64,000 nt of DNA, taken from positions 1-64,000 of IMG/VR virus record IMGVR_UViG_3300035698_010479; one strand, given 5' to 3'. Positions 1,362 through 63,373 of the stretch are shown here, in pieces. The notes below the pieces were generated by a model, which saw only the letters and a list, made by a program, of their open reading frames with translations, was not told where the DNA came from and did not search any database. The translations under genes and the position numbers were made by a program. Position 1 is the first letter of the stretch; each line of letters begins with the position of its first letter.

Positions 1362-1619
1362 ATGAATATATACATCGCAACTGACACGAAAAAAGAGCCT
1401 GCTGGCATAATACTAGCTGAATCATCTAAAATAGCTTGGGTAATCTTCGGAGCTCTCGGAGTTGATGCAGTATCTGTTGAAGAAATTAATCCAAACGACC
1501 CTTCATTCGCTACTCAAGCAGTAATTTACTTACTTACCTCAACAAACGTTCCAGGACATCATATTTGTGACTCCCGTAGACGTCATGAAGATGTTAAAAT
1601 CTGGAAGAGAGGTAAGTGA
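1362..1619 (+). CDS. hypothetical protein
   Basis: 85-aa ORF abutting both neighbours. Confidence 0.5.
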   Translation: MNIYIATDTKKEPAGIILAESSKIAWVIFGALGVDAVSVEEINPNDPSFATQAVIYLLTSTNVPGHHICDSRRRHEDVKIWKRGK

Positions 1620-1620
1620 T

Positions 1621-2607
1621 ATGTTTAAACAACTTAAAAAGTTTTTAAATAATCATACCGATTGGTTTCTGCCATTTTCAATATGGTTATTTGGTGCCTT
1701 TGTACTAGTTATCGTAATGCATACACTAGAAAACAGATCTATATTTGAATCAATATATTACTGTGTGGTCACTGCAAGCACCACGGGTTTTGGTGATATA
1801 GCACCACTTACTGTTGTAGGTAGAATATTTACAATGGTATACATGTTAACTGCTATTACAGCAATGGGTATATTTATAAATGCTTTAATGGCTAGGTCAA
1901 AAACTCTAAATATGAAGAAGAGGTTGGGTATGTTAACAATAAAAACTGTGCCATATTTGATAATAATTGGTTATCCGTCTAAAGGAAAAGTACTTGGTAT
2001 AGTGGAAACAATACGTGCCTATAAGCCTGACTGCAAAATCATATGTGTTGCTGATATTCCAGAAATACCAAATTGGATGATGTATGAAAATGTAGTAGAA
2101 TTTGTGAAAGGTAGAGGTTCTCAAATAGATGTATTGCGTCGTGCAAATGTAGTTAATGCTAATAGTATTTTAATATTAGCACAGAATCCCAATGACTTGG
2201 TATCAGATGAGCAGACATTTGCTGCAGTTACTTTATGTGAACAACTTAACCCCGCAGCTCATACAGTAGCCGAGAAAGTACACACTGGTGAGTGCTTATT
2301 GGATCACTCATTATGTGATAAAGTAGTTACTGTCTGTAGACCAAATGAACTTGCTTCTGAGATAATTGATGCTGGTATTATTGATTTTATTGATAGCATA
2401 GTATCACCAGCAACAAAGGAAAGACAGCGTAATATTAAATCAGCAAATCAAGATTCTGTATGGTATCAGTTAGCACAAGAAGTACTATTCAAAGGAGATA
2501 TACCATTAGGATTTTCTATCAACGGCGGCAAGACATTCACATTTGCACCCAGCCCAAATGATATTGTCCCAGCTAAGTCAGTAATAAAAATATTAACAAG
2601 AAAATAA
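1621..2607 (+). CDS. potassium channel (2TM pore + TrkA-N/RCK domain)
   Basis: Selectivity filter TTGFGDIAP between two hydrophobic helices; RCK-like IIIGY...VEFVKG...LRRANV. Start moved from 1567 to the ATG at 1621 (GAGG upstream). Confidence 0.9.
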   Translation: MFKQLKKFLNNHTDWFLPFSIWLFGAFVLVIVMHTLENRSIFESIYYCVVTASTTGFGDIAPLTVVGRIFTMVYMLTAITAMGIFINALMARSKTLNMKKRLGMLTIKTVPYLIIIGYPSKGKVLGIVETIRAYKPDCKIICVADIPEIPNWMMYENVVEFVKGRGSQIDVLRRANVVNANSILILAQNPNDLVSDEQTFAAVTLCEQLNPAAHTVAEKVHTGECLLDHSLCDKVVTVCRPNELASEIIDAGIIDFIDSIVSPATKERQRNIKSANQDSVWYQLAQEVLFKGDIPLGFSINGGKTFTFAPSPNDIVPAKSVIKILTRK

Positions 2608-47494: not shown

Positions 47495-47696
47495 CACGAG
47501 GTGTATATGCGTAGAAATAATGTAAAGAAAACAAAACATAATAAAATCAATCGGATGACTACTGATACTCTTACTGGTTTTATAAAAGAATTAGAAAAAG
47601 CAAATCAAGGTAATAGTAAAGTGTATGCTATGGCTATACAAACATTAGCATTATCCAAAAATAAAATTGTAAAATAAAACATATTAGGTGACCATT

Positions 47697-48350
47697 ATGA
47701 AAATGCTTATTCCTGTATTTTTATTAATATTCTTATTTTGTACACCAGCAATGGCTACTGTAATGAATTATGATGGTTGCCGGTATGATTGTCATGAAGA
47801 AAAAACAACTTACACAAAACGTTGGGATACTGTAAAAGAAATTAAACATACAGACATCGTGAAAGAAATGTTATATATTAATAGAACTTCTACACCAATA
47901 ATTGGTCCTAATGATATATTAAGACAATGTATTAACTATATTGAATACGATAAAATCAAAAATGGTGTCACTGCCGGAACAGTTACTGATTATACACTAA
48001 TAAACGGTAGAGTTGGTAATAAAAGTGGTGAAACCTTTGCTAGATGTGATGATCCTACAAATGAAAAATGGATTAAAAAATGGGTAGAGGAACTAGAAGT
48101 AGACAAAACTGTAACCTGGTCTGAATTTATTACAATACCAAATGAAGATTTATTTACTATAAGTAAGTGGGTATGTTTTCCACTAACTGAATCAGTGATT
48201 ACATATTTTCGTGGTGGTGGTGGGTATGATTATCCACATAACTATACACCACCAATAGGAAGTGCACCAGTACCGGAGCCATCTACAATATTGCTATTAG
48301 GGGTAGGTCTTTTAGGTTTTGCTTCCATAAGTAAATTTAGAAAGAAATAA
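47697..48350 (+). CDS. PEP-CTERM sorting-domain protein
   Basis: Signal peptide ending AMA; C-terminal APVPEPSTILLLGVGLLGFASISKFRKK. Confidence 0.85.
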   Translation: MKMLIPVFLLIFLFCTPAMATVMNYDGCRYDCHEEKTTYTKRWDTVKEIKHTDIVKEMLYINRTSTPIIGPNDILRQCINYIEYDKIKNGVTAGTVTDYTLINGRVGNKSGETFARCDDPTNEKWIKKWVEELEVDKTVTWSEFITIPNEDLFTISKWVCFPLTESVITYFRGGGGYDYPHNYTPPIGSAPVPEPSTILLLGVGLLGFASISKFRKK

Positions 48351-49136: not shown

Positions 49137-49370
49137 ATGAATAATAAGATATTAGATCTACATGGAGTAAAACACGAAGATGTAAAGCAATTAGTAATTA
49201 ACTTTATAGAGAATAACTGGACAATAGAAGAAAGTTTAGTTGTAGTTACAGGACATAGTAGAAAGATGAAAAATATTGTTATAGTAGTACTTAATGAGTA
49301 TAAATTACAGTATATACCTGGGGATATATTTAATGAATTAGCCCCTAAAATTATATTTTGGGTGAGATAA
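49137..49370 (+). CDS. Smr/MutS2-like domain protein
   Basis: ILDLHGV...VVTGHS. Confidence 0.75.
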   Translation: MNNKILDLHGVKHEDVKQLVINFIENNWTIEESLVVVTGHSRKMKNIVIVVLNEYKLQYIPGDIFNELAPKIIFWVR

Positions 49371-50014
49371 TGTTAGTAAAAACTTTTGTACATTTTGTAT
49401 GTTTGCTAGTTGTGATTAGTGTATTATCAATTGCAAAAGAAGTGCGGGCTATACCGATAGTAGAGACAGGGTCTCAGTGGGAATACACAATTCTAAATAA
49501 CGATTTGTGGCCTAACTGGTCATCCGTTAATTACAATTCTTTTGATTGGCAAGGTAATAGTCAGTGGTATACTGGTTCTGCTGCCTTCGGTAATGAATAT
49601 GCTGGCGGATTGGCCTTTAATACTTATTGGCAAGCGAACCAAGATATGGCTTTACAATATAATTTTAATGTAGACGGTATTATATCAGGGCCAATAACAT
49701 TGAACGTAGCTTCTGATAATGGGTTTCTTGTTTTCATCAACGGTACTCAGGTCGCTAAAGAAAATGCAGAAGGATACACCAAATATTGGGAATACACTTT
49801 GGACATATCCAGTTTTTCTGATGTATTTAGATCACAAGGAACCAATATTATACAGGTACTTGCTGAAGATCATGGTGTAGCTACGTTTTTCGATCTTCAA
49901 ATGAATGCTAATGTTTCTGCTGCACCAGTACCTGAACCAGCTACCTTTTTATTACTTGGAGCTGGTTTAGTTGGTCTGTCAACCATACGAAGAAAAAAGG
50001 TTAGTAAAACATAA
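49370..50014 (+). CDS. PEP-CTERM protein with beta-sandwich (PA14/galactose-binding-like) domain
   Basis: Signal peptide; W.TG.AAFG, SDNGFLVFING; C-terminal APVPEPATFLLLGAGLVGLSTIRRKK. Confidence 0.85.
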   Translation: MLVKTFVHFVCLLVVISVLSIAKEVRAIPIVETGSQWEYTILNNDLWPNWSSVNYNSFDWQGNSQWYTGSAAFGNEYAGGLAFNTYWQANQDMALQYNFNVDGIISGPITLNVASDNGFLVFINGTQVAKENAEGYTKYWEYTLDISSFSDVFRSQGTNIIQVLAEDHGVATFFDLQMNANVSAAPVPEPATFLLLGAGLVGLSTIRRKKVSKT

Positions 50015-50442: not shown

Positions 50443-50767
50443 GGGAGTGTGGTGGAACGGTATACACATGGGAGAGCTAGTAGCTCAGTCCCCCTCAAGT
50501 AGAAATACATGAGTAAACTGTGGGTTAATTCGGGAGAGTCTAAGTCGAAAGATAAGGCAATCGCGAGCCAAGCTGGAAATACATTTTCAGAAGGTGTACA
50601 GACTACTGGAGAGCTTGAGTGCTCTTAATAACCAGCTAGAACGCCCACTACCATAGCAGGTAATGCTGATGGTAAAGAGATAGTCGGTGTCTTTTAGAAA
50701 TAAAAGAACAACATGCTTAAAATCCCCCGGCAGTAATGCCGTAAGAGTTCGAATCTCTTCATTCCCA
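50443..50767 (+). tRNA. tRNA-Leu(TAA), intron-containing (exons 50443-50473 and 50716-50767)
   Basis: GGGAGTG/CATTCCC; spliced anticodon arm TGGGA-CTTAAAA-TCCCC; long variable arm; AAGAG-TTCGAAT-CTCTT. Confidence 0.82.
50474..50715 (+). mobile_element. group I intron (242 nt, no ORF) in tRNA-Leu(TAA)
   Basis: P AATTCGGGAG, Q AATCGCGAGC, R GTACAGACTA, S AAGAGATAGTC, P3 GTGGG/CCCAC, terminal G. Confidence 0.85.
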
Positions 50768-53416: not shown

Positions 53417-53546
53417 TGCTATTTAGTGTAACGGCAAGCACGCTAAAATCTCCTTATTAGATAGTTCCTCATCTCACGATGACGGTGTATAATATGGTTA
53501 CTTCTAATCATAATAGAGAAGACTGGTTCGACTCCAGAAATAGCGA
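53417..53546 (+). ncRNA. Y-RNA-like element B (tRNA-framed form)
   Basis: Acceptor TGCTATT/AATAGCG, D arm, T arm CTGG-TTCGACT-CCAG; insert CCTTATTA-GATAGTTCC...CGGTGTA-TAATATGG-TTACTTC. Confidence 0.7.
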
Positions 53547-53561
53547 CCGTAGTTAAGACTT

Positions 53562-53708
53562 TGATCTGTAGCTCAGTTGGTAGAGCAGCTGTTTAAAAAA
53601 GCCTGTTTTTGTTTATTCCTCCTTTCTCCTCCTTCGTTGTGGACGGTGTAAAAAACAGATACTTCAATATGGCATAGCGGGTCATGGGTTCGAGTCCCAT
53701 CGGATCAA
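53562..53708 (+). ncRNA. Y-RNA-like element C (tRNA-framed form)
   Basis: TGATCTG/CGGATCA, TAGCTCAGTTGGTAGAGC, ATGGG-TTCGAGT-CCCAT; insert CTGTTTTT-GTTTATTCC...CGGTGTA-AAAAACAG-ATACTTC. Confidence 0.72.
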
Positions 53709-54020
53709 TAATTGTGTTTAAGTATACCAAATATTAGGGTGCGGTTGGTTTCGAAAGCCAATGAATCTAATTGAGAGCGGCGGAAAATACAGCGAGATGA
53801 GTTCGTGGTATACTTTATTATTTTAAATTAAGGAATTTATATGAGATACGATGATGATTTAACTGTAAAAGCTGTAAAAGAGTGGGGCCTTAAACATTTT
53901 GATTGGCCTATTCAAGTATACGATTGTAACCAAAATTTCGTAGTTACAAGCCGTAAACATGTAGTAACTGTACGTAAAAATTGTGGTACAGTTGATGTAT
54001 GTGACAAGATAGAAACATAA

Positions 54021-54101: not shown

Positions 54102-54192
54102 TTAAAACTTGAATGGTGAATAGTATGGTTACTTCTATAGACTCTTAATCTAACCAAAAAAAACCTTACTAGCTAGTTCCTTCAGGTTTTAA
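54102..54192 (+). ncRNA. Y-RNA-like element D (short form)
   Basis: TTAAAACTTGAA/TTCAGGTTTTAA stem; TGGTGAA-TAGTATGG-TTACTTC ... CCTTACTA-GCTAGTTCC. Confidence 0.68.
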
Positions 54193-54222
54193 TACCTCTT
54201 TAATTAAAACACGTAGTATATC

Positions 54223-54290
54223 TAGGGTGGTGAATAGCACAGTTACTTCACTGTAAATGAAAAAACAACTGTACTAGTTTGTTCCCTCTA
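54223..54290 (+). ncRNA. Y-RNA-like element E (short form), just upstream of Ro60
   Basis: TGGTGAA-TAGCACAG-TTACTTC ... CTGTACTA-GTTTGTTCC. Confidence 0.68.
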
Positions 54291-54315
54291 ATTTTGTGTT
54301 AAAGGAGAAAACACA

Positions 54316-55761
54316 ATGTCAAAGTTAAATAGAACAGTTCCGCAAATTAAAACTTTTAATGGCGCAGTAGCAAAACACATTTCTCCAGAAGCAATGCTAA
54401 GACGTTCTATAATGTCTTGCTTGTTATGGGAAAAAGAATTTTATGAGAGTGGTTCAACTATCGCACAACGTATTGAAAATCTCGTACCTCAAGTAGACCC
54501 AATGGTTGTAGCCGACCTCGCTATACTTGCAAGAACAAGGATGAATCTCAGACATGTACCATTGTTGATCATTAATACAATGTTAAAATTCACTGAACAT
54601 AGAAAATATGTCAGAGAAGTTATTAATCATGTTGTTAATCGTCCTGATGAAATGGGTGAACTTCTAACAATGTATTTTGGTGGTGGTACAAAAAATAAAC
54701 CCCTTGCAAATGCATTGAAAAAAGGTCTTGCTGATGTATTCTGTAAATTTAACGAGTACCAGTTGGCCAAGTATAATCGCGATGCGGCTATAAAATTACG
54801 TGATGTTCTATTTCTTACTCACGCAAAACCTGTAGATAACCAACAAGCAGTTCTTTGGAAAAAGCTTATAGGTGGATTTTGTAAAAATTGTGGTCAAAGT
54901 CATTACAATAAAGATACTAAGTGTATCGACGATAATTCAACAACAACCGATTGTTCACAGTATGATGAATTGGTACTGGCTACACCTGACACATGGGAAG
55001 TAGCGTTAAGTTCTGGTGGTGATAAGACCGCTCATTGGACACGTCTTCTGTCTGAAGGAAAGTTGGGCGCTCTGGCACTACTACGTAACTTACGTAATAT
55101 GCAGACAGCTGGTATTGAAAAGGATAAAATCGCAGATGCTTTTCAAAAAACTGACTTGAGTAAAGTACTACCTTATAGATACATTGCTGCAGCTAGATAC
55201 GCACCAAGTCTTGAGGGTGTGCTTGAAGAAGGTATGTTTAGAAGTCTGAAGGGTTATCAAAAAATGGAAGGTCATACTGTGCTATTAATTGACGTTTCCG
55301 GTAGTATGGATTGGGCACTTTCGGATAAATCTGATTTACGTAGGATTGATGCTGCGTGTGGTCTTGCAATGTTACTTCGTGAGACATGTGAAAAAGTAGA
55401 TATTTTTACATTCAGCACAAAACTGGTAGAAGTAGCACCAAGAAGAGGTTTTGCTCTGCGTGATGCTATAGTTGGTAGTCAAAACCATAGCTCTACATAT
55501 CTTGGAAAAGCTATTAAAGCTTTATTTTCAAACGATAGAAGTGAAAGTGCTTTTAAAGGCCGTAATCTTTCACCAAATCGTCTTATTGTTATTTCAGATG
55601 AGCAATCAAATGACAAAGTACCTGACCCAAAATGTGTTAGCTATATGATAAATGTAGCTTCTGCTAAAAACGGTGTTGGTTACGGGGCGTGGAATCATGT
55701 AGATGGCTTTAGTGAAGCAGTTGTACAATGGATTCAAGAATTGGAAAATGATAAAAAATAA
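54316..55761 (+). CDS. rsr: Ro60/TROVE-domain RNA-binding protein with vWA domain
   Basis: LWEKEFYESG, AR..MNLRH.P, RPDE, YQLAKY, PDTWE..LS, ALLRNLRN, LPYRY, DVSGSM (MIDAS), ISDEQ, GFSE. Confidence 0.93.
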   Translation: MSKLNRTVPQIKTFNGAVAKHISPEAMLRRSIMSCLLWEKEFYESGSTIAQRIENLVPQVDPMVVADLAILARTRMNLRHVPLLIINTMLKFTEHRKYVREVINHVVNRPDEMGELLTMYFGGGTKNKPLANALKKGLADVFCKFNEYQLAKYNRDAAIKLRDVLFLTHAKPVDNQQAVLWKKLIGGFCKNCGQSHYNKDTKCIDDNSTTTDCSQYDELVLATPDTWEVALSSGGDKTAHWTRLLSEGKLGALALLRNLRNMQTAGIEKDKIADAFQKTDLSKVLPYRYIAAARYAPSLEGVLEEGMFRSLKGYQKMEGHTVLLIDVSGSMDWALSDKSDLRRIDAACGLAMLLRETCEKVDIFTFSTKLVEVAPRRGFALRDAIVGSQNHSSTYLGKAIKALFSNDRSESAFKGRNLSPNRLIVISDEQSNDKVPDPKCVSYMINVASAKNGVGYGAWNHVDGFSEAVVQWIQELENDKK

Positions 55762-56904: not shown

Positions 56905-57435
56905 ATGGCACTAATTGAAGACGCCATATTGTTTGCAGAAGAAGCTCATAGAGGTATGAAAAGGAAATTTGACGGTACTGCCTATATAAGACATCCTTTA
57001 TCAGTGATGGGTATATTATCTGGTTACTATTCACAACCTGAAGTACTGGCTGCTGGTGTTATACATGATACAGTAGAAGACTGTGAAGATGTTACATTGG
57101 AAGTAATCCATGAACGCTTTGGTGAAATAGTAGCTGGTTATGTATTTTATGTATCTGAGAAGTCAAGAAAAGATGATGGTAACAGGAAAGTTAGAAAAGC
57201 TATAGACTTAATACACTATAGTAAGGGTGGTTCAGTATCACAAGATATAAAACTTGCAGACATGTTAGATAACATTCCTTCAATGGTATTATTTAATCCA
57301 GTTTTTTCAAAAGTATATTTGGATGAGAAAATGCAATTATTAGGAGTATTGACAAAAGGTAATGTGGAATTAAAAAGTTTAGCTTTAAAATTAGTTACAA
57401 ACATGTTCGTACTCATAAATGATATAAAAATATAG
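56905..57435 (+). CDS. stand-alone HD hydrolase, (p)ppGpp hydrolase (SAH/Mesh1)-like
   Basis: AEEAH.G..RK..G..YI.HP, IHDTVED, RFG..VA, IKLAD.LDN. Confidence 0.85.
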   Translation: MALIEDAILFAEEAHRGMKRKFDGTAYIRHPLSVMGILSGYYSQPEVLAAGVIHDTVEDCEDVTLEVIHERFGEIVAGYVFYVSEKSRKDDGNRKVRKAIDLIHYSKGGSVSQDIKLADMLDNIPSMVLFNPVFSKVYLDEKMQLLGVLTKGNVELKSLALKLVTNMFVLINDIKI

Positions 57436-57447
57436 TAATCTAAATAA

Positions 57448-57576
57448 GACCAGTTAGCTCAACGGTAGAGCATTAAGCCACCTTATTAGCTAGTTCCCTA
57501 TGTAAATAGCGGTGTATAGTATGGTTACTTCTCTTATGATAAAAGAAAGATAAAGGTTCGAATCCTTTGCTGGTCA
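57448..57576 (+). ncRNA. Y-RNA-like element F (tRNA-framed form)
   Basis: GACCAGT/GCTGGTC, TAGCTCAACGGTAGAGC, AAAGG-TTCGAAT-CCTTT; insert CCTTATTA-GCTAGTTCC...CGGTGTA-TAGTATGG-TTACTTC. Confidence 0.72.
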
Positions 57577-57740
57577 AATTAAAAACGTTGGGGTTGATGT
57601 GCTAGTCCTCCATGTAAGTTCCATGGTAAACTTACAATAGTACGAAAGTATAAAACTGCAACTCTTTTCAGTTATCAGACTAAACTGTTCGTATTAACTT
57701 AATTGAATAGTAATGTATAGGAGATATATAAAAGAAGAAA

Positions 57741-58460
57741 ATGAAAGAAGAAACTGTAATAGATATTCTAGATATGAATTACCCTTTGCTTGTTAATTTT
57801 AAAGCAGCAGCACAGGGTACCTTTGCCCACAGTAAAGTGCTTTCAGACATACTAGAAAAGATTGGCAACGCTTTAGGTCTTAATAGTCGTTTATTAAAAA
57901 CTATAGGGCTTTATCATGATATAGGAAAAAGTATTACACCAATGCTGTATTCAGAGAACCAACCTGCCGATTTTAACCCTCATGATAAGCTTGAAGCATG
58001 GATATCTTTTGCTCTAGTTGCTGGACATGTAGCACACTCAGTACAAATACTTCTGACTGATCCAAACGTGCCTAAAGAGGTAGTCACTATATGTTCTCAA
58101 CATCATGGAACTACCCTTGCCTTGTACTTCTTTAAAAAGAGTGGAAGTACTGATGAAAATGAATTCAGATATAAAACACAGAGACCACAATCATTTGAAG
58201 CTGCTTTGTTAATGATTTGCGATCATCTAGAAGCTCGTATTAGATCTGAAATTAATAGTGGTAGAATTACCAACCAGGAGGGTATAGAGAATCTCGTTGA
58301 ATTAGTTTTTAATCATTTGGTGGATGATAATCAATTTGATGATGTTGTGGTTCCTAGTTTTAAAACACTTCGTAAACTAAAAATAGTTTTAAAAGAAGAG
58401 TTTTCAGAGCTTTTTAAAGATCATAAACGTATTGATTATACACAAGACACTGAAAAGTAA
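57741..58460 (+). CDS. stand-alone HD phosphodiesterase resembling the PgpH (7TM-HD, c-di-AMP PDE) catalytic domain
   Basis: A.GTF.HS, YHDIGK, ENQ, NPHD, QHHGTT, YFF, FRY..RPQS.EAALLM.CD..EA. Confidence 0.8.
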   Translation: MKEETVIDILDMNYPLLVNFKAAAQGTFAHSKVLSDILEKIGNALGLNSRLLKTIGLYHDIGKSITPMLYSENQPADFNPHDKLEAWISFALVAGHVAHSVQILLTDPNVPKEVVTICSQHHGTTLALYFFKKSGSTDENEFRYKTQRPQSFEAALLMICDHLEARIRSEINSGRITNQEGIENLVELVFNHLVDDNQFDDVVVPSFKTLRKLKIVLKEEFSELFKDHKRIDYTQDTEK

Positions 58461-58643: not shown

Positions 58644-59540
58644 ATGAAAGAAAAACAAAATGCAGATGTAGGCGTAGTAATTGGTCGTTTTCAAGTAGAC
58701 GATCTCCACGAAGGTCATCTAAATCTACTTTCTACAGTAGAACAATCACACAGTAGACTTATAATCTTTATAGGTTTATCTTCATGTAAATGTACTTATA
58801 ACAATCCACTTGACTTTGAGTCGAGGCGAGCTATGTTACAAATACATTATCCAAAAGCAACCATCCTTTACATTAAAGACGTACATGACGACCTGTTTTG
58901 GTCTAAAGATCTCGATAATAAAATATCAGGTTTATTAGGTCCTGGTCAGACAGTCTGTCTTTATGGTAGTAGAGATTCATTTATTCCCTATTATCATGGT
59001 AAACTACCAGTAAGAGAGCTTGTTCAAGAAACTTATTTCTCAGGTACGGAGGTTCGTAAACAAGTAGCTATTAGATCCAATTCTTCTAGAGACTTTAGAG
59101 CTGGTGCTATATGGGCGCTAGGTAATCAGTATCCTTCTCCTAATTTTACAATTGATGTCGCTATATTTGATGATAATTTCACTCGAATTCTTCTTGGAAG
59201 GAAAGTGAAAGAAACAAAATATAGACTGATAGGTGGCTTTATTCAAAACTCTGAGAAGATTTCTGATGCAGTCGCAAGAGAAGCACTGGAAGAAACTCAT
59301 CTAGTATTAAATAATATTAAATACATTGATAGCTTCCCTTCAACTGATTGGCGTTACCGTAGCGAAAGAGATAAGATTACCACCATACTTCATACAGCAA
59401 CAATAAAATCAGGTGTGCCTGAACCGGATGATGACATCCATGAACTTCGTTGGTTTGATTTTAACAACGATATACTAGATCTAATTGTCCCCGAACATCT
59501 TGATATGCTAACTGTATTACTAAAGCTGTCAAGAAGTTAA
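58644..59540 (+). CDS. bifunctional NMN adenylyltransferase / Nudix (ADP-ribose pyrophosphatase), NadM-Nudix/NatV-like
   Basis: IGRFQ...HEGH, NPL....R, SGTEVR; Nudix box GGF...E....AV.REALEET. Confidence 0.9.
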   Translation: MKEKQNADVGVVIGRFQVDDLHEGHLNLLSTVEQSHSRLIIFIGLSSCKCTYNNPLDFESRRAMLQIHYPKATILYIKDVHDDLFWSKDLDNKISGLLGPGQTVCLYGSRDSFIPYYHGKLPVRELVQETYFSGTEVRKQVAIRSNSSRDFRAGAIWALGNQYPSPNFTIDVAIFDDNFTRILLGRKVKETKYRLIGGFIQNSEKISDAVAREALEETHLVLNNIKYIDSFPSTDWRYRSERDKITTILHTATIKSGVPEPDDDIHELRWFDFNNDILDLIVPEHLDMLTVLLKLSRS

Positions 59541-59817
59541 CAATGTTATAGGAGGATTATGAAACAAATAAAAATAAAGGAAGTAGTACTACCAATAAAA
59601 GTACCATCAGGTAAATATTGTTGGGAGCATCATATATCTGGCACTTGTAATTATTTTGATAATGAAGGAGGACACTCTTCTTGTGAATTAAAATTTCACT
59701 GCCAAAAAGATACTAAGCAGGGTGTTTTAAAAGATCCAGCATGTGCGGCGTTAGTAGATGTCTTGATTATTGATAATATATCATAAATTATTTGTCTTCA
59801 TCCAAGGTACTTACTAA

Positions 59818-60009
59818 ATGAAAACATACAAAGAAAGAAAAGAAGAAAGAAAAAAGCAGTACGAAAAACATGAGTTCGGTTGGCGTTCCCGTAAGTGTGG
59901 TGCCTGTGATGGTGCCGGTTACTACGACTATAACGGTTCACCTCCTTGTGGTGCCTGTGAAGGTACAGGTAAGGAGAAGTATACAGGACCAAAAATCTCC
60001 ATTCTATGA
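59818..60009 (+). CDS. small DnaJ-type zinc-finger protein
   Basis: CGACDGAG ... CGACEGTG. Confidence 0.65.
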   Translation: MKTYKERKEERKKQYEKHEFGWRSRKCGACDGAGYYDYNGSPPCGACEGTGKEKYTGPKISIL

Positions 60010-60045
60010 CCCGAAAGATGTTATGGACTGGTAAATATTAATTTA

Positions 60046-60072
60046 TTCTTAGATGCGTTGATGCAAGGAGAA
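60046..60072 (+). promoter_or_regulatory. RBS-sequestering motif, copy 2 (before NAMPT)
   Basis: TTCTTAGATGCGTTGATGCAAGGAGAA; TTCTT can pair with AAGGA. Confidence 0.45.
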
Positions 60073-60077
60073 AAATT

Positions 60078-61409
60078 ATGAGTAAGAGAAATGTAGTATT
60101 CACAACAGATAGTTATAAAGTTAGTCACTGGTTGCAGTTTCCTAAAAACGAAGGGTCATATTATTATATAGAATCTCGTGGCGGGGCAGAAACAGTGTTG
60201 TTTTATGGGCTTCAGATGATTATAAAAAAGCTTTTAGATCGTGTTCCAACTAAAGCTGAAGTTGAACGTGCTGCTAAATCATGGACTGAACATGGGGTTA
60301 CTTTTAATAAGAATGGATGGATGGCCCTATCTGAGCTTGGTTATTTCCCTATCGAAATTAAAGCTGTTGAAGAAGGTAAACTGGTTGGGACTAAAGAAGT
60401 ACAAGTAACTATTGAATCCACAGACAAACGGTTTGGTTGGTTACCTGGTTGGTTAGAAACTCGACTTTTACAGTTGTGGTATCCTACTACTGTTGCAACT
60501 AAACAATTTGAATGCAAGAAGATTATTATAAATTATCTAAATAAAACTGGTACTCCAGAAGATGCACCGTTTAAACTTCACTCCTTCGGCTACAGGGGTG
60601 CAAGCTCTGAAGAGTCAGCAGGCGTCGGAGGTTCTGCTGAACTTCTTACATCTATGGGTACAGATACAATTGTAGGAGTCTACACTGCACAGGATTATTA
60701 TAACACTGATGCTATGTTAGGCTTTAGTATTAATGCATCAGAACATAGCACTATAACTGCGTGGGGAAGAGAATTTGAAAAGGATGCATATGAAAATATG
60801 CTTGACCAATTCTTGAAGCCTGGTGCTATACTAGCTTGCGTGTCTGATAGTTATGACCTTAGTAAAGTAATACTTGAGTACTGGGGACGTGAGTTCAAGG
60901 ATAGGATTGTAAAATCTGGTGCTACTTTGGTAGTGCGTCCTGACTCAGGTGATCCTGTAACTATAGTACTTAGATCTTTGGAACAATTACGTTCAAGTTT
61001 TGGTGTAACTACAAACGACAAAGGTTATATGGTACTGCCTAATTGTGTAAGACTTATCCAAGGTGATGGTCTTGATGGGCCTGCAGAAATTGAAGCGATT
61101 CTTGCTGCAATGGAAGCTGTTGGTTGGTCTGCAGATAATATTGCTTTTGGTATGGGAGGTGGTTCTTTACAACAACTAAATCGTGATACATATAAATACG
61201 CTATGAAAATGTCCTCAATACTAGTTGATGGTGAGTGGCGGGATGTATATAAGCAACCTGCTGATGCTGCATGGAAAATTAGCAAGAAGGGGAGATTTGA
61301 TAATTTAAATCTTCCAACCGTATGGAAGGACGGAGTATTCATCCGTGAATATACTTTTGAGGAAGTACGAGCTAACGCTATGGAGGAACTCGAAAAAGTT
61401 TGCAGTTAA
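60078..61409 (+). CDS. nadV: nicotinamide phosphoribosyltransferase
   Basis: TDSYK.SH..Q.P, YIESRG, WYPTTVAT, LH.FG.RG, GTDT, ASEHS, VSDSYD, RPDSG.P, IQGDG, FGMGG..LQ..NRDT, KISKKGR. Confidence 0.93.
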   Translation: MSKRNVVFTTDSYKVSHWLQFPKNEGSYYYIESRGGAETVLFYGLQMIIKKLLDRVPTKAEVERAAKSWTEHGVTFNKNGWMALSELGYFPIEIKAVEEGKLVGTKEVQVTIESTDKRFGWLPGWLETRLLQLWYPTTVATKQFECKKIIINYLNKTGTPEDAPFKLHSFGYRGASSEESAGVGGSAELLTSMGTDTIVGVYTAQDYYNTDAMLGFSINASEHSTITAWGREFEKDAYENMLDQFLKPGAILACVSDSYDLSKVILEYWGREFKDRIVKSGATLVVRPDSGDPVTIVLRSLEQLRSSFGVTTNDKGYMVLPNCVRLIQGDGLDGPAEIEAILAAMEAVGWSADNIAFGMGGGSLQQLNRDTYKYAMKMSSILVDGEWRDVYKQPADAAWKISKKGRFDNLNLPTVWKDGVFIREYTFEEVRANAMEELEKVCS

Positions 61410-61979
61410 ATAATGTGTTGACGATACAAAATATCGTTAATTCAGAGGGCGCAGAAGGAAGTGTAATAAATGACAAGATTATATTGTACTTTGAGTGCCT
61501 GATGGTGTCGCCGAGGAGGTAAGCATTATGTGGGTCTGTCAAACCTTTATCTATGATACCGGCGATGCCGCATCTTATAGGAGTACTTATGGGATTTGCT
61601 GAAATTAAAAAGAAAGAAACACCATTACCACGTTATAAAAATACAGTTGTATGTCATAAATGTCACGCAGAATATAATAAAGATGTTCAATTTGTAAAAG
61701 GTATTACAGTATCTAGTAATACTGGTACTGACCTCGGTGACTTTATACCACTTGCTACAATAAGAATTGGTACTTGTCCTATGTGCTCAACAAGTGAAAA
61801 GATAACTTTATGAAAACAAAGACATCTAAGATATTAGAAACAGTTGATGTAATAGCCGGAAAAAGCTATCATCAGGGCACCTTTGCTAGCATTTCACATA
61901 AGTACCCTAGTGACTTTAGTAGAATGAGTAAAGAAATAAGTGAGCTACGTAAAAAGCTTGTTGATATGCTAGCAGATGA

Positions 61980-62012
<33 letters not shown>

Positions 62013-62162
62013 TCAAGTACTGGTCTCTAGAAGTTGTTGAGTTTAAAGTTAAACCACATAATAAAAGACCAAATTCAATATATAAGGACTCTAAAACATC
62101 AGGTCATATTACTAAATCAGGTGTTGGTATGGTAGGTAAACTAATTAAAAAAGGCTAATATT

Positions 62163-62912
62163 ATGCACTCACCGTTAAAATACTGTACTAAGGGTGTACC
62201 ACTACCAAATTATTTAATTGACGGACCAGAGCGTGTTTTAAACGTTTCTGAAGCTAATGTGGAAGTAGTTTACGGAGGTGATGGTTCAGTACTTCGTGGA
62301 GTACAAGGTATAGTAAAGAACAATGTACCAGACGTTCTAATACTTGGTATTAATACTGGACACGTTGGCTTCTTATCAAACGATATTAGTAAAGAACAAG
62401 CATTAGCTTTCCTTACCAATCCTAATGAGGCCCTTATTGAGAAGCGTAATATGTTACGTATAAGCAATAATGATACTGTATGGTATGCACTTAATGAAAT
62501 AGTAATTCAACCACTAAAAAGAGGACCATTATTTGAAACGCTGCTTAAAGTTGACAATGATGATTTAGTATATAAGGGAGATGGCTTGATAATTTCTACT
62601 CCTTCTGGTAGTACTGCTTATAATCTATCTGCTGGAGGACCTATTATACATCCAAGTACCAACGTGCTTGGTATTACACCTATATGCCCATTTTCTCTCG
62701 CTGCACGGCCTATTGTAGTACCGAATTCTGTAAAACTTCTTGTTAATACTTCTGCCGATGCTGAAATAACTATAGATGGTGTATCAGTGTTCGTTGGAGT
62801 ACTAAAGAATATGTCGATAGATCTTGCAGCATTTACTATAAATTTAGTTAAGTTTGACTCGTTTTTTGAGGCAATACATAATAAACTTGGGTGGAACTAC
62901 TCTATACGGTGA
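62163..62912 (+). CDS. nadK: NAD(+) kinase
   Basis: GGDGSVL, GINTG.VGFL, ALNE, GDGLIISTPSGSTAYNLSAGGP, PICP.SL..RP, IDG. Confidence 0.93.
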   Translation: MHSPLKYCTKGVPLPNYLIDGPERVLNVSEANVEVVYGGDGSVLRGVQGIVKNNVPDVLILGINTGHVGFLSNDISKEQALAFLTNPNEALIEKRNMLRISNNDTVWYALNEIVIQPLKRGPLFETLLKVDNDDLVYKGDGLIISTPSGSTAYNLSAGGPIIHPSTNVLGITPICPFSLAARPIVVPNSVKLLVNTSADAEITIDGVSVFVGVLKNMSIDLAAFTINLVKFDSFFEAIHNKLGWNYSIR

Positions 62913-62917
62913 CTAGT

Positions 62918-63373
62918 ATGATACAACTTATAAACGAAGATATTCTTGGTAACTTAGATACAAATAAACAAAAAACAATTATTCTTCATGGGTGTAATTG
63001 TTTCCACACAATGGGTTCTGGTATTGCTAAATACTTAAGAGCCAAATTTCCAAAGGTTTACACAGTAGATATTACTACTACTAAACGTGGTGATAAATCA
63101 AAGCTTGGTACTTTTAGTACAGCAATCATTGAGGATAGATTTGTAATACTTAATTGTTATACACAATTCAGATATGGTAGAGATAACATCCTGTATGCTA
63201 ACTATGCAGCTATAGAAAAATGTTTTAGACAGGTGGCTTTGCAGTATGATAATTCATGGGAAGTACGGCTTCCAAAAATAGGGTGCGGATTGGCAGGTGG
63301 TGATTGGAATATTGTAGGGCCATTGTTGATGATGCATTTAAACAATCATAGTACTAAAGTTTATTATAAGTAA
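62918..63373 (+). CDS. macro domain protein (ADP-ribose processing, TARG1/Poa1-like)
   Basis: HGCNCFHTMGSGIA, NCYTQ, PKIGCGLAGGDW. Confidence 0.9.
   Translation: MIQLINEDILGNLDTNKQKTIILHGCNCFHTMGSGIAKYLRAKFPKVYTVDITTTKRGDKSKLGTFSTAIIEDRFVILNCYTQFRYGRDNILYANYAAIEKCFRQVALQYDNSWEVRLPKIGCGLAGGDWNIVGPLLMMHLNNHSTKVYYK

What the first reader, a model, noticed from the sequence alone, without database searches (positions are those of the whole stretch)
56905..58460. Paired nucleotide-signal hydrolases flanking a Y-like RNA
Seen: an SAH/Mesh1-like HD protein and a soluble PgpH-like HD domain lacking its 7TM sensor. Known: these families degrade (p)ppGpp-type alarmones and c-di-AMP, and PgpH is inhibited by ppGpp. 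Inference: together they erase stress or immune signals (stringent response, toxic alarmones, possibly CBASS-type cyclic dinucleotides). c-di-AMP also regulates RCK-type K+ transport, a possible link to the channel at 1621.
Basis: partly seen in the sequence, partly recalled or inferred. Interest (0 to 1): 0.62.

Follow-up and report, generated by a model that had tools for sequence, protein, structure and literature searches.

The report
Phage HD hydrolases flanking tRNA-shaped Y RNA
A 228-kb uncultured jumbo phage carries an alarmone/tRNA-pyrophosphate hydrolase and a membrane-anchor-less PgpH-type phosphodiesterase on either side of a tRNA-shaped Y RNA, inside an island of RNA-repair and NAD-salvage genes that most likely keeps translation running against host abortive-infection toxins.

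Summary
HD1 (56905-57435) is an intact single-domain RelA/SpoT-type hydrolase, 41% identical to the tested phage SAH PaSpo. HD2 (57741-58460) is a soluble PgpH-type HD domain: E 2e-30 to PDB 4S1B, model TM 0.93, all seven metal ligands, no 7TM part. The RNA between them (57448-57576) is a tRNA-like molecule whose anticodon arm is replaced by a Ro-binding-type helix. It is a circular permutation of bacterial YrlA and one of five Y-like RNAs around the phage Ro60 gene.

The two genes are not a conserved pair. Of 80 other phage SAH loci, none has HD2. Of 80 phage Ro loci, none has HD2 and one has an SAH.

HD2's recurrent neighbours are tRNA arrays, Rnl2-type RNA ligases, CCA-adding enzyme, RlaP, PTH2, Thg1 and cRec. 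The local island also holds NMNAT-Nudix, NAMPT, NAD kinase and a DarG-like macrodomain.

Best reading: two independent end-cleaning or counter-defence enzymes of an RNA/tRNA-rescue island. HD1 strips 3'-pyrophosphates from alarmones and from tRNA CCA ends. HD2 opens cyclic phosphodiesters, either RNA 2',3'-cyclic ends or c-di-AMP-like messengers; this is unresolved. Similar roles were already predicted for jumbo phages. The permuted Y RNA and the viral soluble PgpH family are the new parts.

The parts
56905..57435 (+). HD1: single-domain RelA/SpoT-type hydrolase (small alarmone hydrolase, PaSpo-like), 176 aa
   Evidence: Pfam HD_4 at E 2.3e-11. PDB Rel/SAH/MESH1 hits. 41% identity to Salmonella phage SSU5 PaSpo, E 1e-31. 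H15, R20, H30, H54-D55, E58-D59, D119 and N123 are invariant in 7 relatives.
57448..57576 (+). tRNA-topology Y RNA. Parts: acceptor stem 57448-57454 / 57569-57575; D arm 57457-57471; Ro-type helix with internal loop and cap 57481-57524; conserved UUACUUC and small hairpin to 57549; T arm 57552-57568; discriminator A at 57576. No anticodon loop.
   Evidence: Rfam tRNA model 43.9 bits with a 71-nt insert. A 4-orthologue consensus fold gives 35 pairs, 10 with compensatory changes. An 8-copy fold gives 23 pairs, 16 compensatory. The motif is linked to TROVE genes in 17 viral contigs.
57586..57700 (+). Conserved structured leader or small RNA directly upstream of the HD2 ribosome-binding site. It includes a hairpin with the invariant loop UUAUCAGACYAAA and a covarying stem.
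   Evidence: Aligned in 5 relatives whether or not another ORF precedes it. No Rfam match at E up to 5.
57741..58460 (+). HD2: soluble PgpH-type binuclear HD phosphodiesterase, 239 aa
   Evidence: PDB 4S1B at E 2e-30. Model TM 0.93 to PgpH. H30, H59, D60, H96, H121, H122 and D161 are invariant in 32 relatives. Most PgpH-invariant residues are kept.
54316..55761 (+). Phage Ro60 orthologue (TROVE plus vWA)
   Evidence: Pfam TROVE at E 2.7e-20, vWA_Ro60. More than 500 related viral loci.
53418..53545 (+). tRNA-topology Y-like RNA, copy 1
   Evidence: Read from the sequence. Motif scan. Included in the consensus fold.
53562..53708 (+). tRNA-topology Y-like RNA, copy 2 (anticodon stem kept, module in place of the loop)
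   Evidence: Rfam tRNA 49 bits with a 77-nt insert. Consensus fold.
54108..54186 (+). Minimal stand-alone Y-like RNA (ends in the Ro-type stem, no tRNA-like domain)
   Evidence: Motif pair in canonical order. Fold. Orthologue in L003.
54222..54292 (+). Second minimal stand-alone Y-like RNA, just upstream of the Ro start codon
   Evidence: Helix P1 shows compensatory changes relative to the other copies.
58644..59540 (+). NMN adenylyltransferase-Nudix fusion (NatV-like)
   Evidence: Pfam NUDIX and CTP_transf_like; NCBIfam bifunctional NMNAT/Nudix.
60078..61409 (+). Nicotinamide phosphoribosyltransferase (NadV-like)
   Evidence: Pfam NAPRTase at E 9e-45, NAMPT_N.
62163..62912 (+). NAD kinase
   Evidence: Pfam NAD_kinase_C at E 1e-23. 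Also present in L306 and L307.
62891..63373 (+). Macro domain protein, DarG-like
   Evidence: Pfam Macro at E 1.5e-4. PADLOC DarG at E 4e-8.

Best explanation
HD1 and HD2 are two independently inherited HD-superfamily phosphohydrolases. They lie in an accessory island of a jumbo phage. The island's common theme is keeping the translation apparatus and the NAD+ pool usable when host abortive-infection toxins strike.

The island holds more than nine tRNA genes, a Ro60 protein with five Y-like RNAs, the two HD enzymes, NMNAT-Nudix, NAMPT, NAD kinase and a DarG-like macrodomain. Two Rnl2-type RNA ligases follow about 8 kb downstream. A CCA-adding enzyme lies about 46 kb upstream, at roughly 10.8 kb of the window.

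HD1:
- It is a PaSpo-type small alarmone hydrolase.
- With Mn2+ it removes the 3'-pyrophosphate from (pp)pApp and (p)ppGpp and from CCA-pyrophosphorylated tRNA.
- This would neutralise toxSAS/CapRel-type defences and damp the stringent response.
- The fold, the catalytic residues and the homology are shown here. The activity is inferred from tested homologues.

HD2:
- It is a PgpH-type two-metal phosphodiesterase freed from its membrane sensor.
- Its recurrent partners in other phages are tRNA arrays, RNA ligases, CCA-adding enzyme, RlaP, PTH2, Thg1 and cRec.
- From this I infer that it most likely cleans RNA or tRNA 3' ends, opening 2',3'-cyclic phosphates or removing aberrant 3' groups, so that the ligases and the CCA-adding enzyme can finish the repair.
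- It may well still cut c-di-AMP-type cyclic adenylates.

The RNA between them is a Ro-binding Y RNA built on a tRNA frame with free acceptor ends. It is probably cut out of a long transcript by tRNA-processing enzymes.

The two HD genes are neighbours because they share the island, not because they form an obligate two-enzyme system.
For: HD1:
- Searches give the family. One search gives 41% identity to PaSpo. One search shows the catalytic residues are invariant.
- PaSpo neutralises CapRel, PhRel2, FaRel2, PhRel and FaRel (PMC7229694).
- The SAHs MESH1 and ATfaRel restore aminoacylation of CCA-pyrophosphorylated tRNA (bioRxiv 10.1101/2021.04.30.441581).

HD2 fold and ligands.

HD2 contexts:
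- RNA ligase directly upstream in L001/L389 and L013, with Thg1 downstream in L013.
- CCA-adding enzyme, RlaP, ligase-like gene, tRNA, HD2, tRNA, PTH2 in L002/L400.
- TROVE, then HD2, then two RNA ligases in the P0008 contig.
- A ligase-like ORF 560 nt downstream in L398, and HD2 inside tRNA arrays in L390, L394, L395, L404 and L410.
- A HAD/Pnk-phosphatase-like gene and cRec upstream in L014.

Own genome: two RNA ligases at 66.5-68.4 kb and a CCA-adding enzyme at about 10.8 kb.

Independence of the two genes.

Island content.

Iyer et al. 2021 (PMC7824862) predict HD-like 3' phosphatases working with ATP-grasp RNA ligases, and TROVE with a tRNA-like partner, in jumbo-phage RNA repair.

No terminator-like site lies in 53.2-58.7 kb, which fits one long transcript.
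Against: - No enzyme was assayed.
- HD2's only characterised relative is a specific c-di-AMP phosphodiesterase. HD2 keeps nearly all residues that are invariant in bacterial PgpH, so by homology alone the cyclic-dinucleotide substrate is the default.
- About half of the HD2 loci show no RNA-repair neighbour. One subgroup, including the second paralogue in this genome, sits beside a resolvase-like nuclease and a vWA protein instead.
- Phage tRNA regions collect unrelated accessory genes, so neighbourhood evidence is weaker here than in bacterial operons.
- No polynucleotide kinase was identified next to HD2.
- The host, and therefore its defence systems, is unknown.
Confidence: 0.42

Rival explanations
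1. One reading: both enzymes erase small-molecule signals. HD1 degrades (p)ppGpp and (pp)pApp. HD2 degrades c-di-AMP or related 3'-5' cyclic oligoadenylates from CBASS or type III CRISPR. Together they switch off the stringent response and nucleotide-activated immune effectors. RNA is not a substrate of HD2.
For: - HD2 is specifically PgpH-like. It keeps the seven metal ligands and most family-invariant residues.
- PgpH hydrolyses c-di-AMP to pApA (PMC8177086).
- Jumbo phages are predicted to use HD-GYP and HD-alarmone phosphodiesterases against nucleotide signalling (PMC7824862).
- The surrounding genes (NAMPT, NMNAT-Nudix, DarG-like macrodomain) look like counter-defence genes.
- RNA ligase neighbours could simply repair damage from the RNases that those same signals activate.
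Against: - There is no evidence that the host makes c-di-AMP.
- HD2 differs from all bacterial PgpH at several otherwise invariant positions: G100, G146, P147, A160 and A166.
- It has lost the sensor domain.
- Its most repeated neighbours are tRNA and RNA-end enzymes rather than other nucleotide-signal enzymes.
- No known riboswitch for such ligands lies in its conserved leader.
Confidence: 0.3
2. The two HD enzymes and the tRNA-shaped Y RNA form one functional unit. Two versions are possible. In the first, the Y RNA tethers Ro60 to one or both HD enzymes, as Y RNA tethers Ro to PNPase in Deinococcus. In the second, HD1 removes ppGpp that would otherwise inhibit the PgpH-type HD2.
For: - The order SAH, Y-tRNA, HD2 is kept in the window, L003 and L306.
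- SAH and HD2 are also close together in L304 and L401.
- ppGpp inhibition of PgpH is reported by Huynh et al. 2015. This is from my own knowledge; the paper is not held.
- Y RNAs act as tethers (PMC4201824).
Against: - L304 and L401 have no RNA between the two genes.
- L024 has SAH plus the Y-tRNA but no adjacent HD2.
- Neither gene accompanies Ro in 79 of 80 other Ro phages.
- No interaction was tested.
Confidence: 0.1
3. HD1 works in NAD(P) metabolism, like animal MESH1, which is an NADPH phosphatase. It would be one step of the adjacent NAD island (NMNAT-Nudix, NAMPT, NAD kinase) and would have no role against alarmones.
For: - HD1 matches MESH1 structures at E 2e-9 to 3e-10.
- HD1 homologues sit next to NAMPT and NMNAT in L024 and L028, and next to NAD kinase islands in L306 and L308.
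- The window has NAD kinase at 62163-62912.
Against: - HD1 is closer to bacterial Rel hydrolase domains and to phage PaSpo (E 3e-14; 41% identity) than to MESH1.
- Only 1 of 80 other phage SAH loci has NAMPT or NMNAT nearby.
Confidence: 0.08

Closest known systems
PaSpo, the small alarmone hydrolase of Salmonella phage SSU5 (RSH superfamily, SAH class)
   Same: Single HD_4 domain, phage-encoded, 41% identical over 155 residues, same catalytic motifs. PaSpo neutralises all tested toxSAS toxins (PMC7229694).
   Different: HD1 is shorter (176 against 213 aa). It sits next to a Y RNA, Ro60 and NAD-salvage genes, whereas SSU5 has none of these nearby. HD1 is untested.
PgpH (Lmo1466) c-di-AMP phosphodiesterase, HD domain, PDB 4S1B/4S1C
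   Same: Fold (TM 0.93, rmsd 1.7 A), 30-35% identity, the seven metal ligands, and the ENQ, NxHD, QHHGT and RY..P motifs.
   Different: No extracellular or 7TM sensor. Viral. Changes at residues invariant in bacteria: G100 to T/S, G146-P147, A160 to C, A166 to R. Neighbours are tRNA and RNA-repair genes. Substrate unknown.
YrlA, the tRNA-like bacterial Y RNA (Chen et al. 2014, PMC4201824)
   Same: Encoded beside Ro60. D-arm and T-arm mimic tRNA. Bulged Ro-type helix whose 5' strand is a variant of the GNCGAA(N)G motif. Relatives in other Ro phages carry GGUGAAG or GUCGAAG in the canonical YrlA order.
   Different: Circularly permuted. The 5' and 3' ends lie in a 7-bp acceptor stem as in a real tRNA, and the Ro helix is capped by a loop. 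In YrlA the ends lie in the Ro stem and the acceptor stem is closed.
The Salmonella rsr-yrlBA-rtcBA RNA repair operon (PMC7790460)
   Same: Ro60, two kinds of Y RNA, RNA ligase and RNA-end-modifying enzymes are clustered.
   Different: The ligases are Rnl2-type (5'-phosphate/3'-OH) rather than RtcB. There is no RtcA. HD enzymes stand where end-processing enzymes would be expected. An NAD island is inserted between HD2 and the ligases.
Counter-nucleotide phosphodiesterases and RNA-repair sets of jumbo phages (Iyer et al. 2021, PMC7824862)
   Same: That paper predicts 'HD-alarmone' and HD-GYP phosphodiesterases, TROVE with a tRNA-like partner, and HD-like 3' phosphatases alongside RNA ligases.
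   Different: A PgpH-type soluble HD family is not named there as far as I read. HD2 found no relative among 50,697 GenBank phage records, apart from 8 unannotated 'phage' records (30-35% identity), some only 2-3 kb; those labelled Listeria and Enterococcus look like host PgpH.
Phage NAD+ reconstitution by NAMPT plus NMNAT (KVP40 NadV/NatV; 'NARP2' of Osterman et al. 2024; from my own knowledge)
   Same: The adjacent genes 58644-61409 are that pair.
   Different: These are context only. They are not part of the two HD enzymes.

Membership tests
Small alarmone hydrolase (RSH hydrolase-only, PaSpo-like) | HD_4 / RelA-SpoT hydrolase domain above the curated threshold | tested here: met
   PF13328 scores 44.1 bits against a cut-off of 27.2. 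TIGR00691 aligns to positions 1-126 only.
Small alarmone hydrolase (RSH hydrolase-only, PaSpo-like) | Catalytic set: H, HD, ED dyad, D and N of the LAD..N motif, and the basic residue of the GxxRK motif | tested here: met
   H30, H54-D55, E58-D59, D119, N123 and R20 align with Rel and PaSpo and are invariant in 7 relatives.
Small alarmone hydrolase (RSH hydrolase-only, PaSpo-like) | No synthetase or regulatory domains | tested here: met
   The ORF is 176 aa with flanking stops.
Small alarmone hydrolase (RSH hydrolase-only, PaSpo-like) | Hydrolysis of (p)ppGpp, (pp)pApp or tRNA-3'-PP; neutralisation of toxSAS | not testable with these tools
   Needs enzyme assays and co-expression assays.
PgpH / YqfF family (7TM receptor with HD hydrolase) | HD fold with the two-metal site H...HD...H...HH...D | tested here: met
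   H30, H59, D60, H96, H121, H122 and D161 are invariant. They correspond to H514, H543, D544, H580, H604, H605 and D648 of PgpH (PMC8177086; alignment).
PgpH / YqfF family (7TM receptor with HD hydrolase) | Specific structural match to the PgpH HD domain rather than to HD-GYP or other HD families | tested here: met
   TM 0.93, rmsd 1.7 A, E 1e-14. The next hits have TM below 0.5 and E above 9e-3.
PgpH / YqfF family (7TM receptor with HD hydrolase) | N-terminal extracellular and 7TM sensor region | tested here: not met
   HD2 is 239 aa with no upstream coding continuation. Bacterial relatives lie in ORFs of about 500 to 900 aa.
PgpH / YqfF family (7TM receptor with HD hydrolase) | All residues invariant in bacterial PgpH HD domains | tested here: inconclusive
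   About 40 positions are kept. G100, G146, P147, A160, A166 and I118 are replaced throughout the viral family. The roles of these residues could not be checked because the structure paper is not held.
PgpH / YqfF family (7TM receptor with HD hydrolase) | c-di-AMP to pApA hydrolysis, inhibited by ppGpp | not testable with these tools
   Needs an enzyme assay.
YrlA-type Y RNA | Encoded next to a Ro60/TROVE gene | tested here: met
   Five copies lie within 1 kb upstream and 1.7 kb downstream of Ro. The motif lies beside TROVE in 17 other viral contigs.
YrlA-type Y RNA | tRNA-like D and T arms | tested here: met
   The Rfam tRNA model scores 43.9 and 49 bits. The T stem and acceptor stem covary.
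YrlA-type Y RNA | Ro-binding helix with the GNCGAA(N)G motif | tested here: inconclusive
   The copies here read GGUGUAUAG or GGUGAAUAG. Related Ro phages read GGUGAAG or GUCGAAG. The helix P1 and the internal loop are conserved with covariation. Binding was not tested.
YrlA-type Y RNA | 5' and 3' ends in the Ro-binding stem, acceptor stem closed by a loop | tested here: not met
   In three copies, including 57448-57576, the order is acceptor-5', D arm, Ro 3' strand, cap, Ro 5' strand, T arm, acceptor-3'. This is a circular permutation.
RNA repair (ligase plus end-healing) system | End-healing enzyme encoded beside an RNA ligase | tested here: inconclusive
   The two are adjacent in L001, L013, L002/L400, L398 and the P0008 contig. 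In this genome the ligases are 8 kb away. About half of the HD2 loci show no ligase.

The most novel reading that the evidence does not exclude
The RNA between the two HD genes is a Ro60-bound tRNA mimic with a genuine, free, CCA-extendable acceptor end. It would serve the phage as a decoy or sentinel for host toxins that attack tRNA acceptor ends, such as toxSAS pyrophosphorylation, nucleotidyl addition or cleavage. The flanking HD enzymes (SAH and soluble PgpH-type phosphodiesterase) would be recruited through it to clean damaged tRNA 3' ends. This would be a ribonucleoprotein tRNA-repair machine, with a permuted Y RNA as its scaffold.
Probability: 0.1. Interest if true: 0.85.

Novelty: new variant of a known kind. 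Interest (0 to 1): 0.55.

Why it matters
If HD1 behaves like PaSpo, the phage carries a general antidote to toxSAS/CapRel-type abortive infection.

If HD2 is an RNA-end phosphodiesterase, the PgpH fold would gain a second activity. Until now it is known only as a c-di-AMP signalling enzyme. That would also bear on why bacterial pgpH sits with RNA-processing genes.

If HD2 instead cuts c-di-AMP or cyclic oligoadenylates, it would be a new class of phage counter-signal enzyme. It has several hundred viral relatives in the ESM Atlas clusters and none among isolated phages.

The tRNA-topology Y RNAs show that the Ro-binding module and the tRNA mimic can be joined in either circular order. They give a compact phage system (one Ro, five RNAs) in which to ask what the tRNA-like half of bacterial Y RNAs is for. 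That question has been open since 2014.

Tried and rejected
- Nucleotide search of GenBank phages with the 7-kb region found only a short conserved NAMPT stretch. No close isolate exists.
- A single-sequence locus search with HD1 found nothing. An alignment was needed.
- Rfam at E up to 5 gave no Y_RNA, riboswitch or other family in 53.3-58.7 kb apart from tRNA.
- Folding energies of the RNAs are not better than shuffles, so only comparative evidence counts.
- The idea that the 57448 element is a tRNA with an intron was rejected. Removing the 71-nt insert leaves no anticodon stem-loop.
- The idea that SAH generally travels with Ro and Y RNA was rejected: 1 of 80 Ro loci has an SAH and 0 of 80 SAH loci have Ro.
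- The idea that HD2 generally travels with SAH was rejected.
- The promoter and terminator scan was uninformative.
- Three papers were not held: Burroughs and Aravind 2016, and Huynh et al. 2015 on the PgpH structure. The c-di-AMP-contacting residues could therefore not be checked one by one.
No read evidence for RNA ends or expression was obtained, and read laying was not used.
- The large representative protein search and complex prediction were not run. The word search, the family scans and the PDB already placed both proteins, and I do not claim that the proteins bind each other.
- Host prediction was not achieved. PEP-CTERM proteins in the window hint at a Gram-negative host with an exosortase.
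Full report
**Setting**

The window is the first 64 kb of a 228,458-bp IMG/VR virus record. The record is a single contig with an estimated completeness of 86% and 34% G+C. All genes in the region are on the + strand.

From 42.7 kb onward there is a tRNA cluster and a group I intron. These are followed by:
- a Ro60 orthologue (TROVE plus vWA, 54316-55761);
- three small ORFs;
- HD1, a 305-nt gap, and HD2;
- an NMNAT-Nudix fusion, NAMPT, NAD kinase and a DarG-like macrodomain.

No close relative exists among 50,697 GenBank phage records.

**The observation**

HD1 (56905-57435, 176 aa):
- It passes the Pfam HD_4 threshold.
- It aligns to the hydrolase half of RelA/SpoT proteins.
- It matches solved Rel hydrolase domains and stand-alone hydrolases, including MESH1 and a (p)ppApp hydrolase.
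- It is 41% identical (E 1e-31) to SSU5_099, the PaSpo hydrolase of Salmonella phage SSU5.
- The catalytic histidines, the HD and ED dyads, and the D and N of the LAD..N motif are invariant in seven relatives.

HD2 (57741-58460, 239 aa):
- Its only significant PDB hit is the HD domain of Listeria PgpH, E 2e-30.
- A model built on 32 homologues has pLDDT 91.7. It superposes on 4S1C/4S1B with TM 0.81/0.93 and rmsd 1.7 A. HD-GYP and all other HD families score TM below 0.5.
- The seven ligands of the two-metal site are invariant (residue list for PgpH from PMC8177086).
- Most of the 80 bacterial relatives fetched lie in ORFs of about 500 to 900 aa, mostly 650-900, with the HD domain at the C-terminus. 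Only two are clearly short. 'Soluble, sensor-less' is therefore correct.

HD2 belongs to a viral family:
- The word search found 28 proteins of 229-393 aa.
- A further 24 IMG/VR loci were found.
- Several ESM Atlas clusters of about 100 members each are roughly 94% viral.
- This genome holds a second paralogue at 74132-74815, 36% identical.

**The RNA between the genes**

Rfam's tRNA model matches 57448-57576 end to end. The match has a 71-nt insertion where the anticodon arm should be. A second such match lies at 53562-53708. Reading the sequence shows a third at 53418-53545.

The insertions share two conserved strands: CCUUAYUAGNUAGUUCC, and GGUG(U/A)AUAGUAUGGUUACUUC. The same two strands, in the opposite order, form two short stand-alone RNAs at 54108-54186 and 54222-54292, just before the Ro start codon.

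Consensus folding of eight copies gives 23 pairs, 16 of them with compensatory changes:
- an 8-bp helix;
- an asymmetric internal loop;
- a GG/CC helix with a variable cap.

Four orthologues of the HD1-adjacent copy (window, L003, L024, L306) give 35 pairs, 10 with compensatory changes. They have four different but fully paired acceptor stems and a covarying T stem.

A pattern scan of IMG/VR with the 5' strand motif returned mostly chance hits. However, 17 of the loci carry a TROVE gene right beside the motif, with E 1e-143 to 4e-14 against the window's Ro.

In several of those loci the order is Ro 5' strand, T arm, closed acceptor hairpin, D arm, Ro 3' strand. The 5' strand there reads GGUGAAG or GUCGAAG. 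This is the YrlA arrangement and the GNCGAA(N)G motif of Chen et al. 2014 (PMC4201824).

The window's three tRNA-form copies are therefore circular permutations of YrlA. The ends lie in a 7-bp acceptor stem and the Ro helix is capped.

Thermodynamic z-scores are unremarkable in this AT-rich DNA. The case rests on comparison.

I found no description of this permuted form in the papers I could search. I cannot exclude one elsewhere.

**Is it a pair?**

In close relatives (HD2 77% identical) the order Ro ... Zn-ribbon ... SAH, Y-tRNA, HD2, NMNAT-Nudix, NAMPT is kept. Sometimes an extra ORF or a homing endonuclease is inserted.

SAH and HD2 are also close together in:
- L304, where HD2 is 57% identical and a 128-aa ORF lies between them with no RNA;
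- L401, where the SAH lies about 800 nt downstream of HD2;
- L397, where they are 6 kb apart on opposite strands.

Beyond that the genes part company:
- A complete 276-kb phage and a 223-kb phage have HD2 but neither TROVE nor HD_4.
- L024/G003 has SAH, the Y-tRNA, NMNAT and NAMPT with no HD2 next to them. Its only HD2 relative (37% identical) lies elsewhere on that contig.
- Among 80 further Ro loci, one has an SAH within 10 kb and none has HD2.
- Among 80 further SAH loci (38-59% identical), none has Ro or HD2 within 6 kb, one has NAMPT and NMNAT, and three have a tRNA within 500 nt.

The juxtaposition is a feature of this phage lineage's accessory island. It is not a widely conserved two-gene system.

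**What travels with HD2?**

Across about 35 loci the repeated neighbours are tRNA genes and RNA-end enzymes:

| Locus | Neighbours of HD2 |
|---|---|
| L001/L389 | RNA ligase (PF09414) immediately upstream |
| L013 | RNA ligase immediately upstream, Thg1 downstream |
| L002/L400 | CCA-adding enzyme, RlaP, ligase-like, tRNA, HD2, tRNA, PTH2, tRNA |
| L390 | CCA-adding enzyme and RlaP |
| L395, L403, L304 | PTH2 |
| P0008 contig | TROVE upstream, two RNA ligases downstream |
| L398 | ligase-like ORF 560 nt downstream |
| L014 | HAD/Pnk-phosphatase-like protein and cRec upstream |
| L302 | a metallophosphoesterase nearby |

A tRNA or tRNA-like gene lies directly upstream of HD2 in the window clade, L014, L302, L400 and L395.

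In this genome two Rnl2-type ligases lie at 66.5-68.4 kb and a CCA-adding enzyme at about 10.8 kb. Comparison with the P0008 contig suggests that the NAD island was inserted between HD2 and the ligases.

A second subgroup, including this genome's paralogue, instead neighbours a resolvase-like nuclease and a vWA protein.

**Interpretation**

HD1's chemistry is the better founded:
- PaSpo neutralises both (pp)pApp-producing and tRNA-pyrophosphorylating toxSAS toxins (PMC7229694).
- Two other SAHs restore aminoacylation of CCA-pyrophosphorylated tRNA. Those authors likened this to a 3'-phosphatase activity on RNA (bioRxiv 10.1101/2021.04.30.441581).

For HD2, homology says c-di-AMP phosphodiesterase and context says RNA or tRNA 3'-end processing.
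- The viral family keeps about 40 PgpH-invariant residues but replaces G100, G146-P147, A160 and A166 throughout. The pocket is similar but not identical.
- Related phosphodiesterase superfamilies switch between cyclic dinucleotides and RNA ends, and HD phosphodiesterases open 2',3'-cyclic nucleotides non-specifically. This is from my own knowledge and from a reference cited in PMC7824862.

I therefore rank an RNA-centred rescue island first (0.42) and the pure signal-eraser reading second (0.30). For HD1 the two readings overlap.

A coupled unit through the Y RNA or through ppGpp inhibition (0.10) and an NADPH-phosphatase role for HD1 (0.08) remain possible.

**Comparison with the literature**

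Iyer et al. 2021 already predicted the following in jumbo phages (PMC7824862):
- 'HD-alarmone' and HD-GYP phosphodiesterases as counter-nucleotide defences;
- TROVE with a tRNA-like partner;
- HD-like 3' phosphatases working with RNA ligases.

The kinds are therefore known. The following appear to be new:
- a sizeable viral family of sensor-less PgpH-type HD proteins, absent from isolated phages;
- the tRNA-topology permutation of YrlA, present in three copies here;
- a conserved, apparently structured leader of about 115 nt in front of HD2.

**Limits**

- No enzyme, binding or expression data were obtained.
- The host is unknown.
- Neighbourhood counts were made on loci of unequal length and are not a formal enrichment test.
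- The PgpH structure paper was not available, so substrate-contact residues were not checked individually.

Noticed in passing
window 53418-53545, 53562-53708, 54108-54186, 54222-54292 (plus 57448-57576): Five Y-like RNAs surround the phage Ro60 gene. Three have tRNA topology (permuted YrlA) and two are minimal stem-loops. The relative L003 has a sixth copy, at L003 3948-4092.
   Followed up: yes
window 57586-57700: A conserved leader or small RNA of about 115 nt lies directly upstream of HD2. It is kept in five relatives and has a hairpin with a covarying stem and the invariant loop UUAUCAGACYAAA. It has no Rfam match and could be a riboswitch candidate.
   Followed up: partly
window 53720-53830: Another conserved non-coding stretch lies between the Y-tRNAs and a small ORF. 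It is closed by a stem that differs compensatorily in L003 3850-3945. This was seen by eye only.
   Followed up: no
G000:C1:74132-74815 (- strand; outside the window): A second PgpH-type HD paralogue, 36% identical to HD2, lies among a ClpB-like AAA+ protein, an AAA_28 kinase-like protein, a vWA protein, a resolvase-like nuclease and PRPP synthetase. The same arrangement occurs in G003.
   Followed up: partly
window 58644-63373: An NAD island: NMNAT-Nudix, NAMPT, NAD kinase and a DarG-like macrodomain. These look like counter-measures to NAD+ depletion and ADP-ribosylating defences.
   Followed up: partly
G000:C1:66577-68441 and window about 10.8-12.1 kb: Two Rnl2-type RNA ligases lie just past the window's end, and a CCA-adding enzyme lies early in the window.
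   Followed up: partly
window 1567-2607: A K+ channel with Ion_trans_2 and TrkA_N (RCK N-terminal) domains. No RCK_C domain was detected.
   Followed up: partly
window 47688-48350 and 49358-50014: Two proteins end in PEP-CTERM sorting motifs. This is unusual for a phage and hints at a Gram-negative host with an exosortase.
   Followed up: no
window 50469-50707: A group I intron (Rfam 65.6 bits) lies inside the tRNA region.
   Followed up: no
L006 2109-2251: A distant HD2-bearing phage has a tRNA-model match with an unrelated, G+C-richer insertion of about 70 nt in the anticodon arm. It has no Ro-type motif.
   Followed up: no
L308 576-1460: In one relative an HNH_3 endonuclease gene lies directly upstream of the SAH gene, which is called only as a 93-aa fragment.
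   Followed up: no
L003 7800-7860: A T-arm-plus-acceptor-like minihelix follows the Y-tRNA in the relative L003 but is absent from the window.
   Followed up: no
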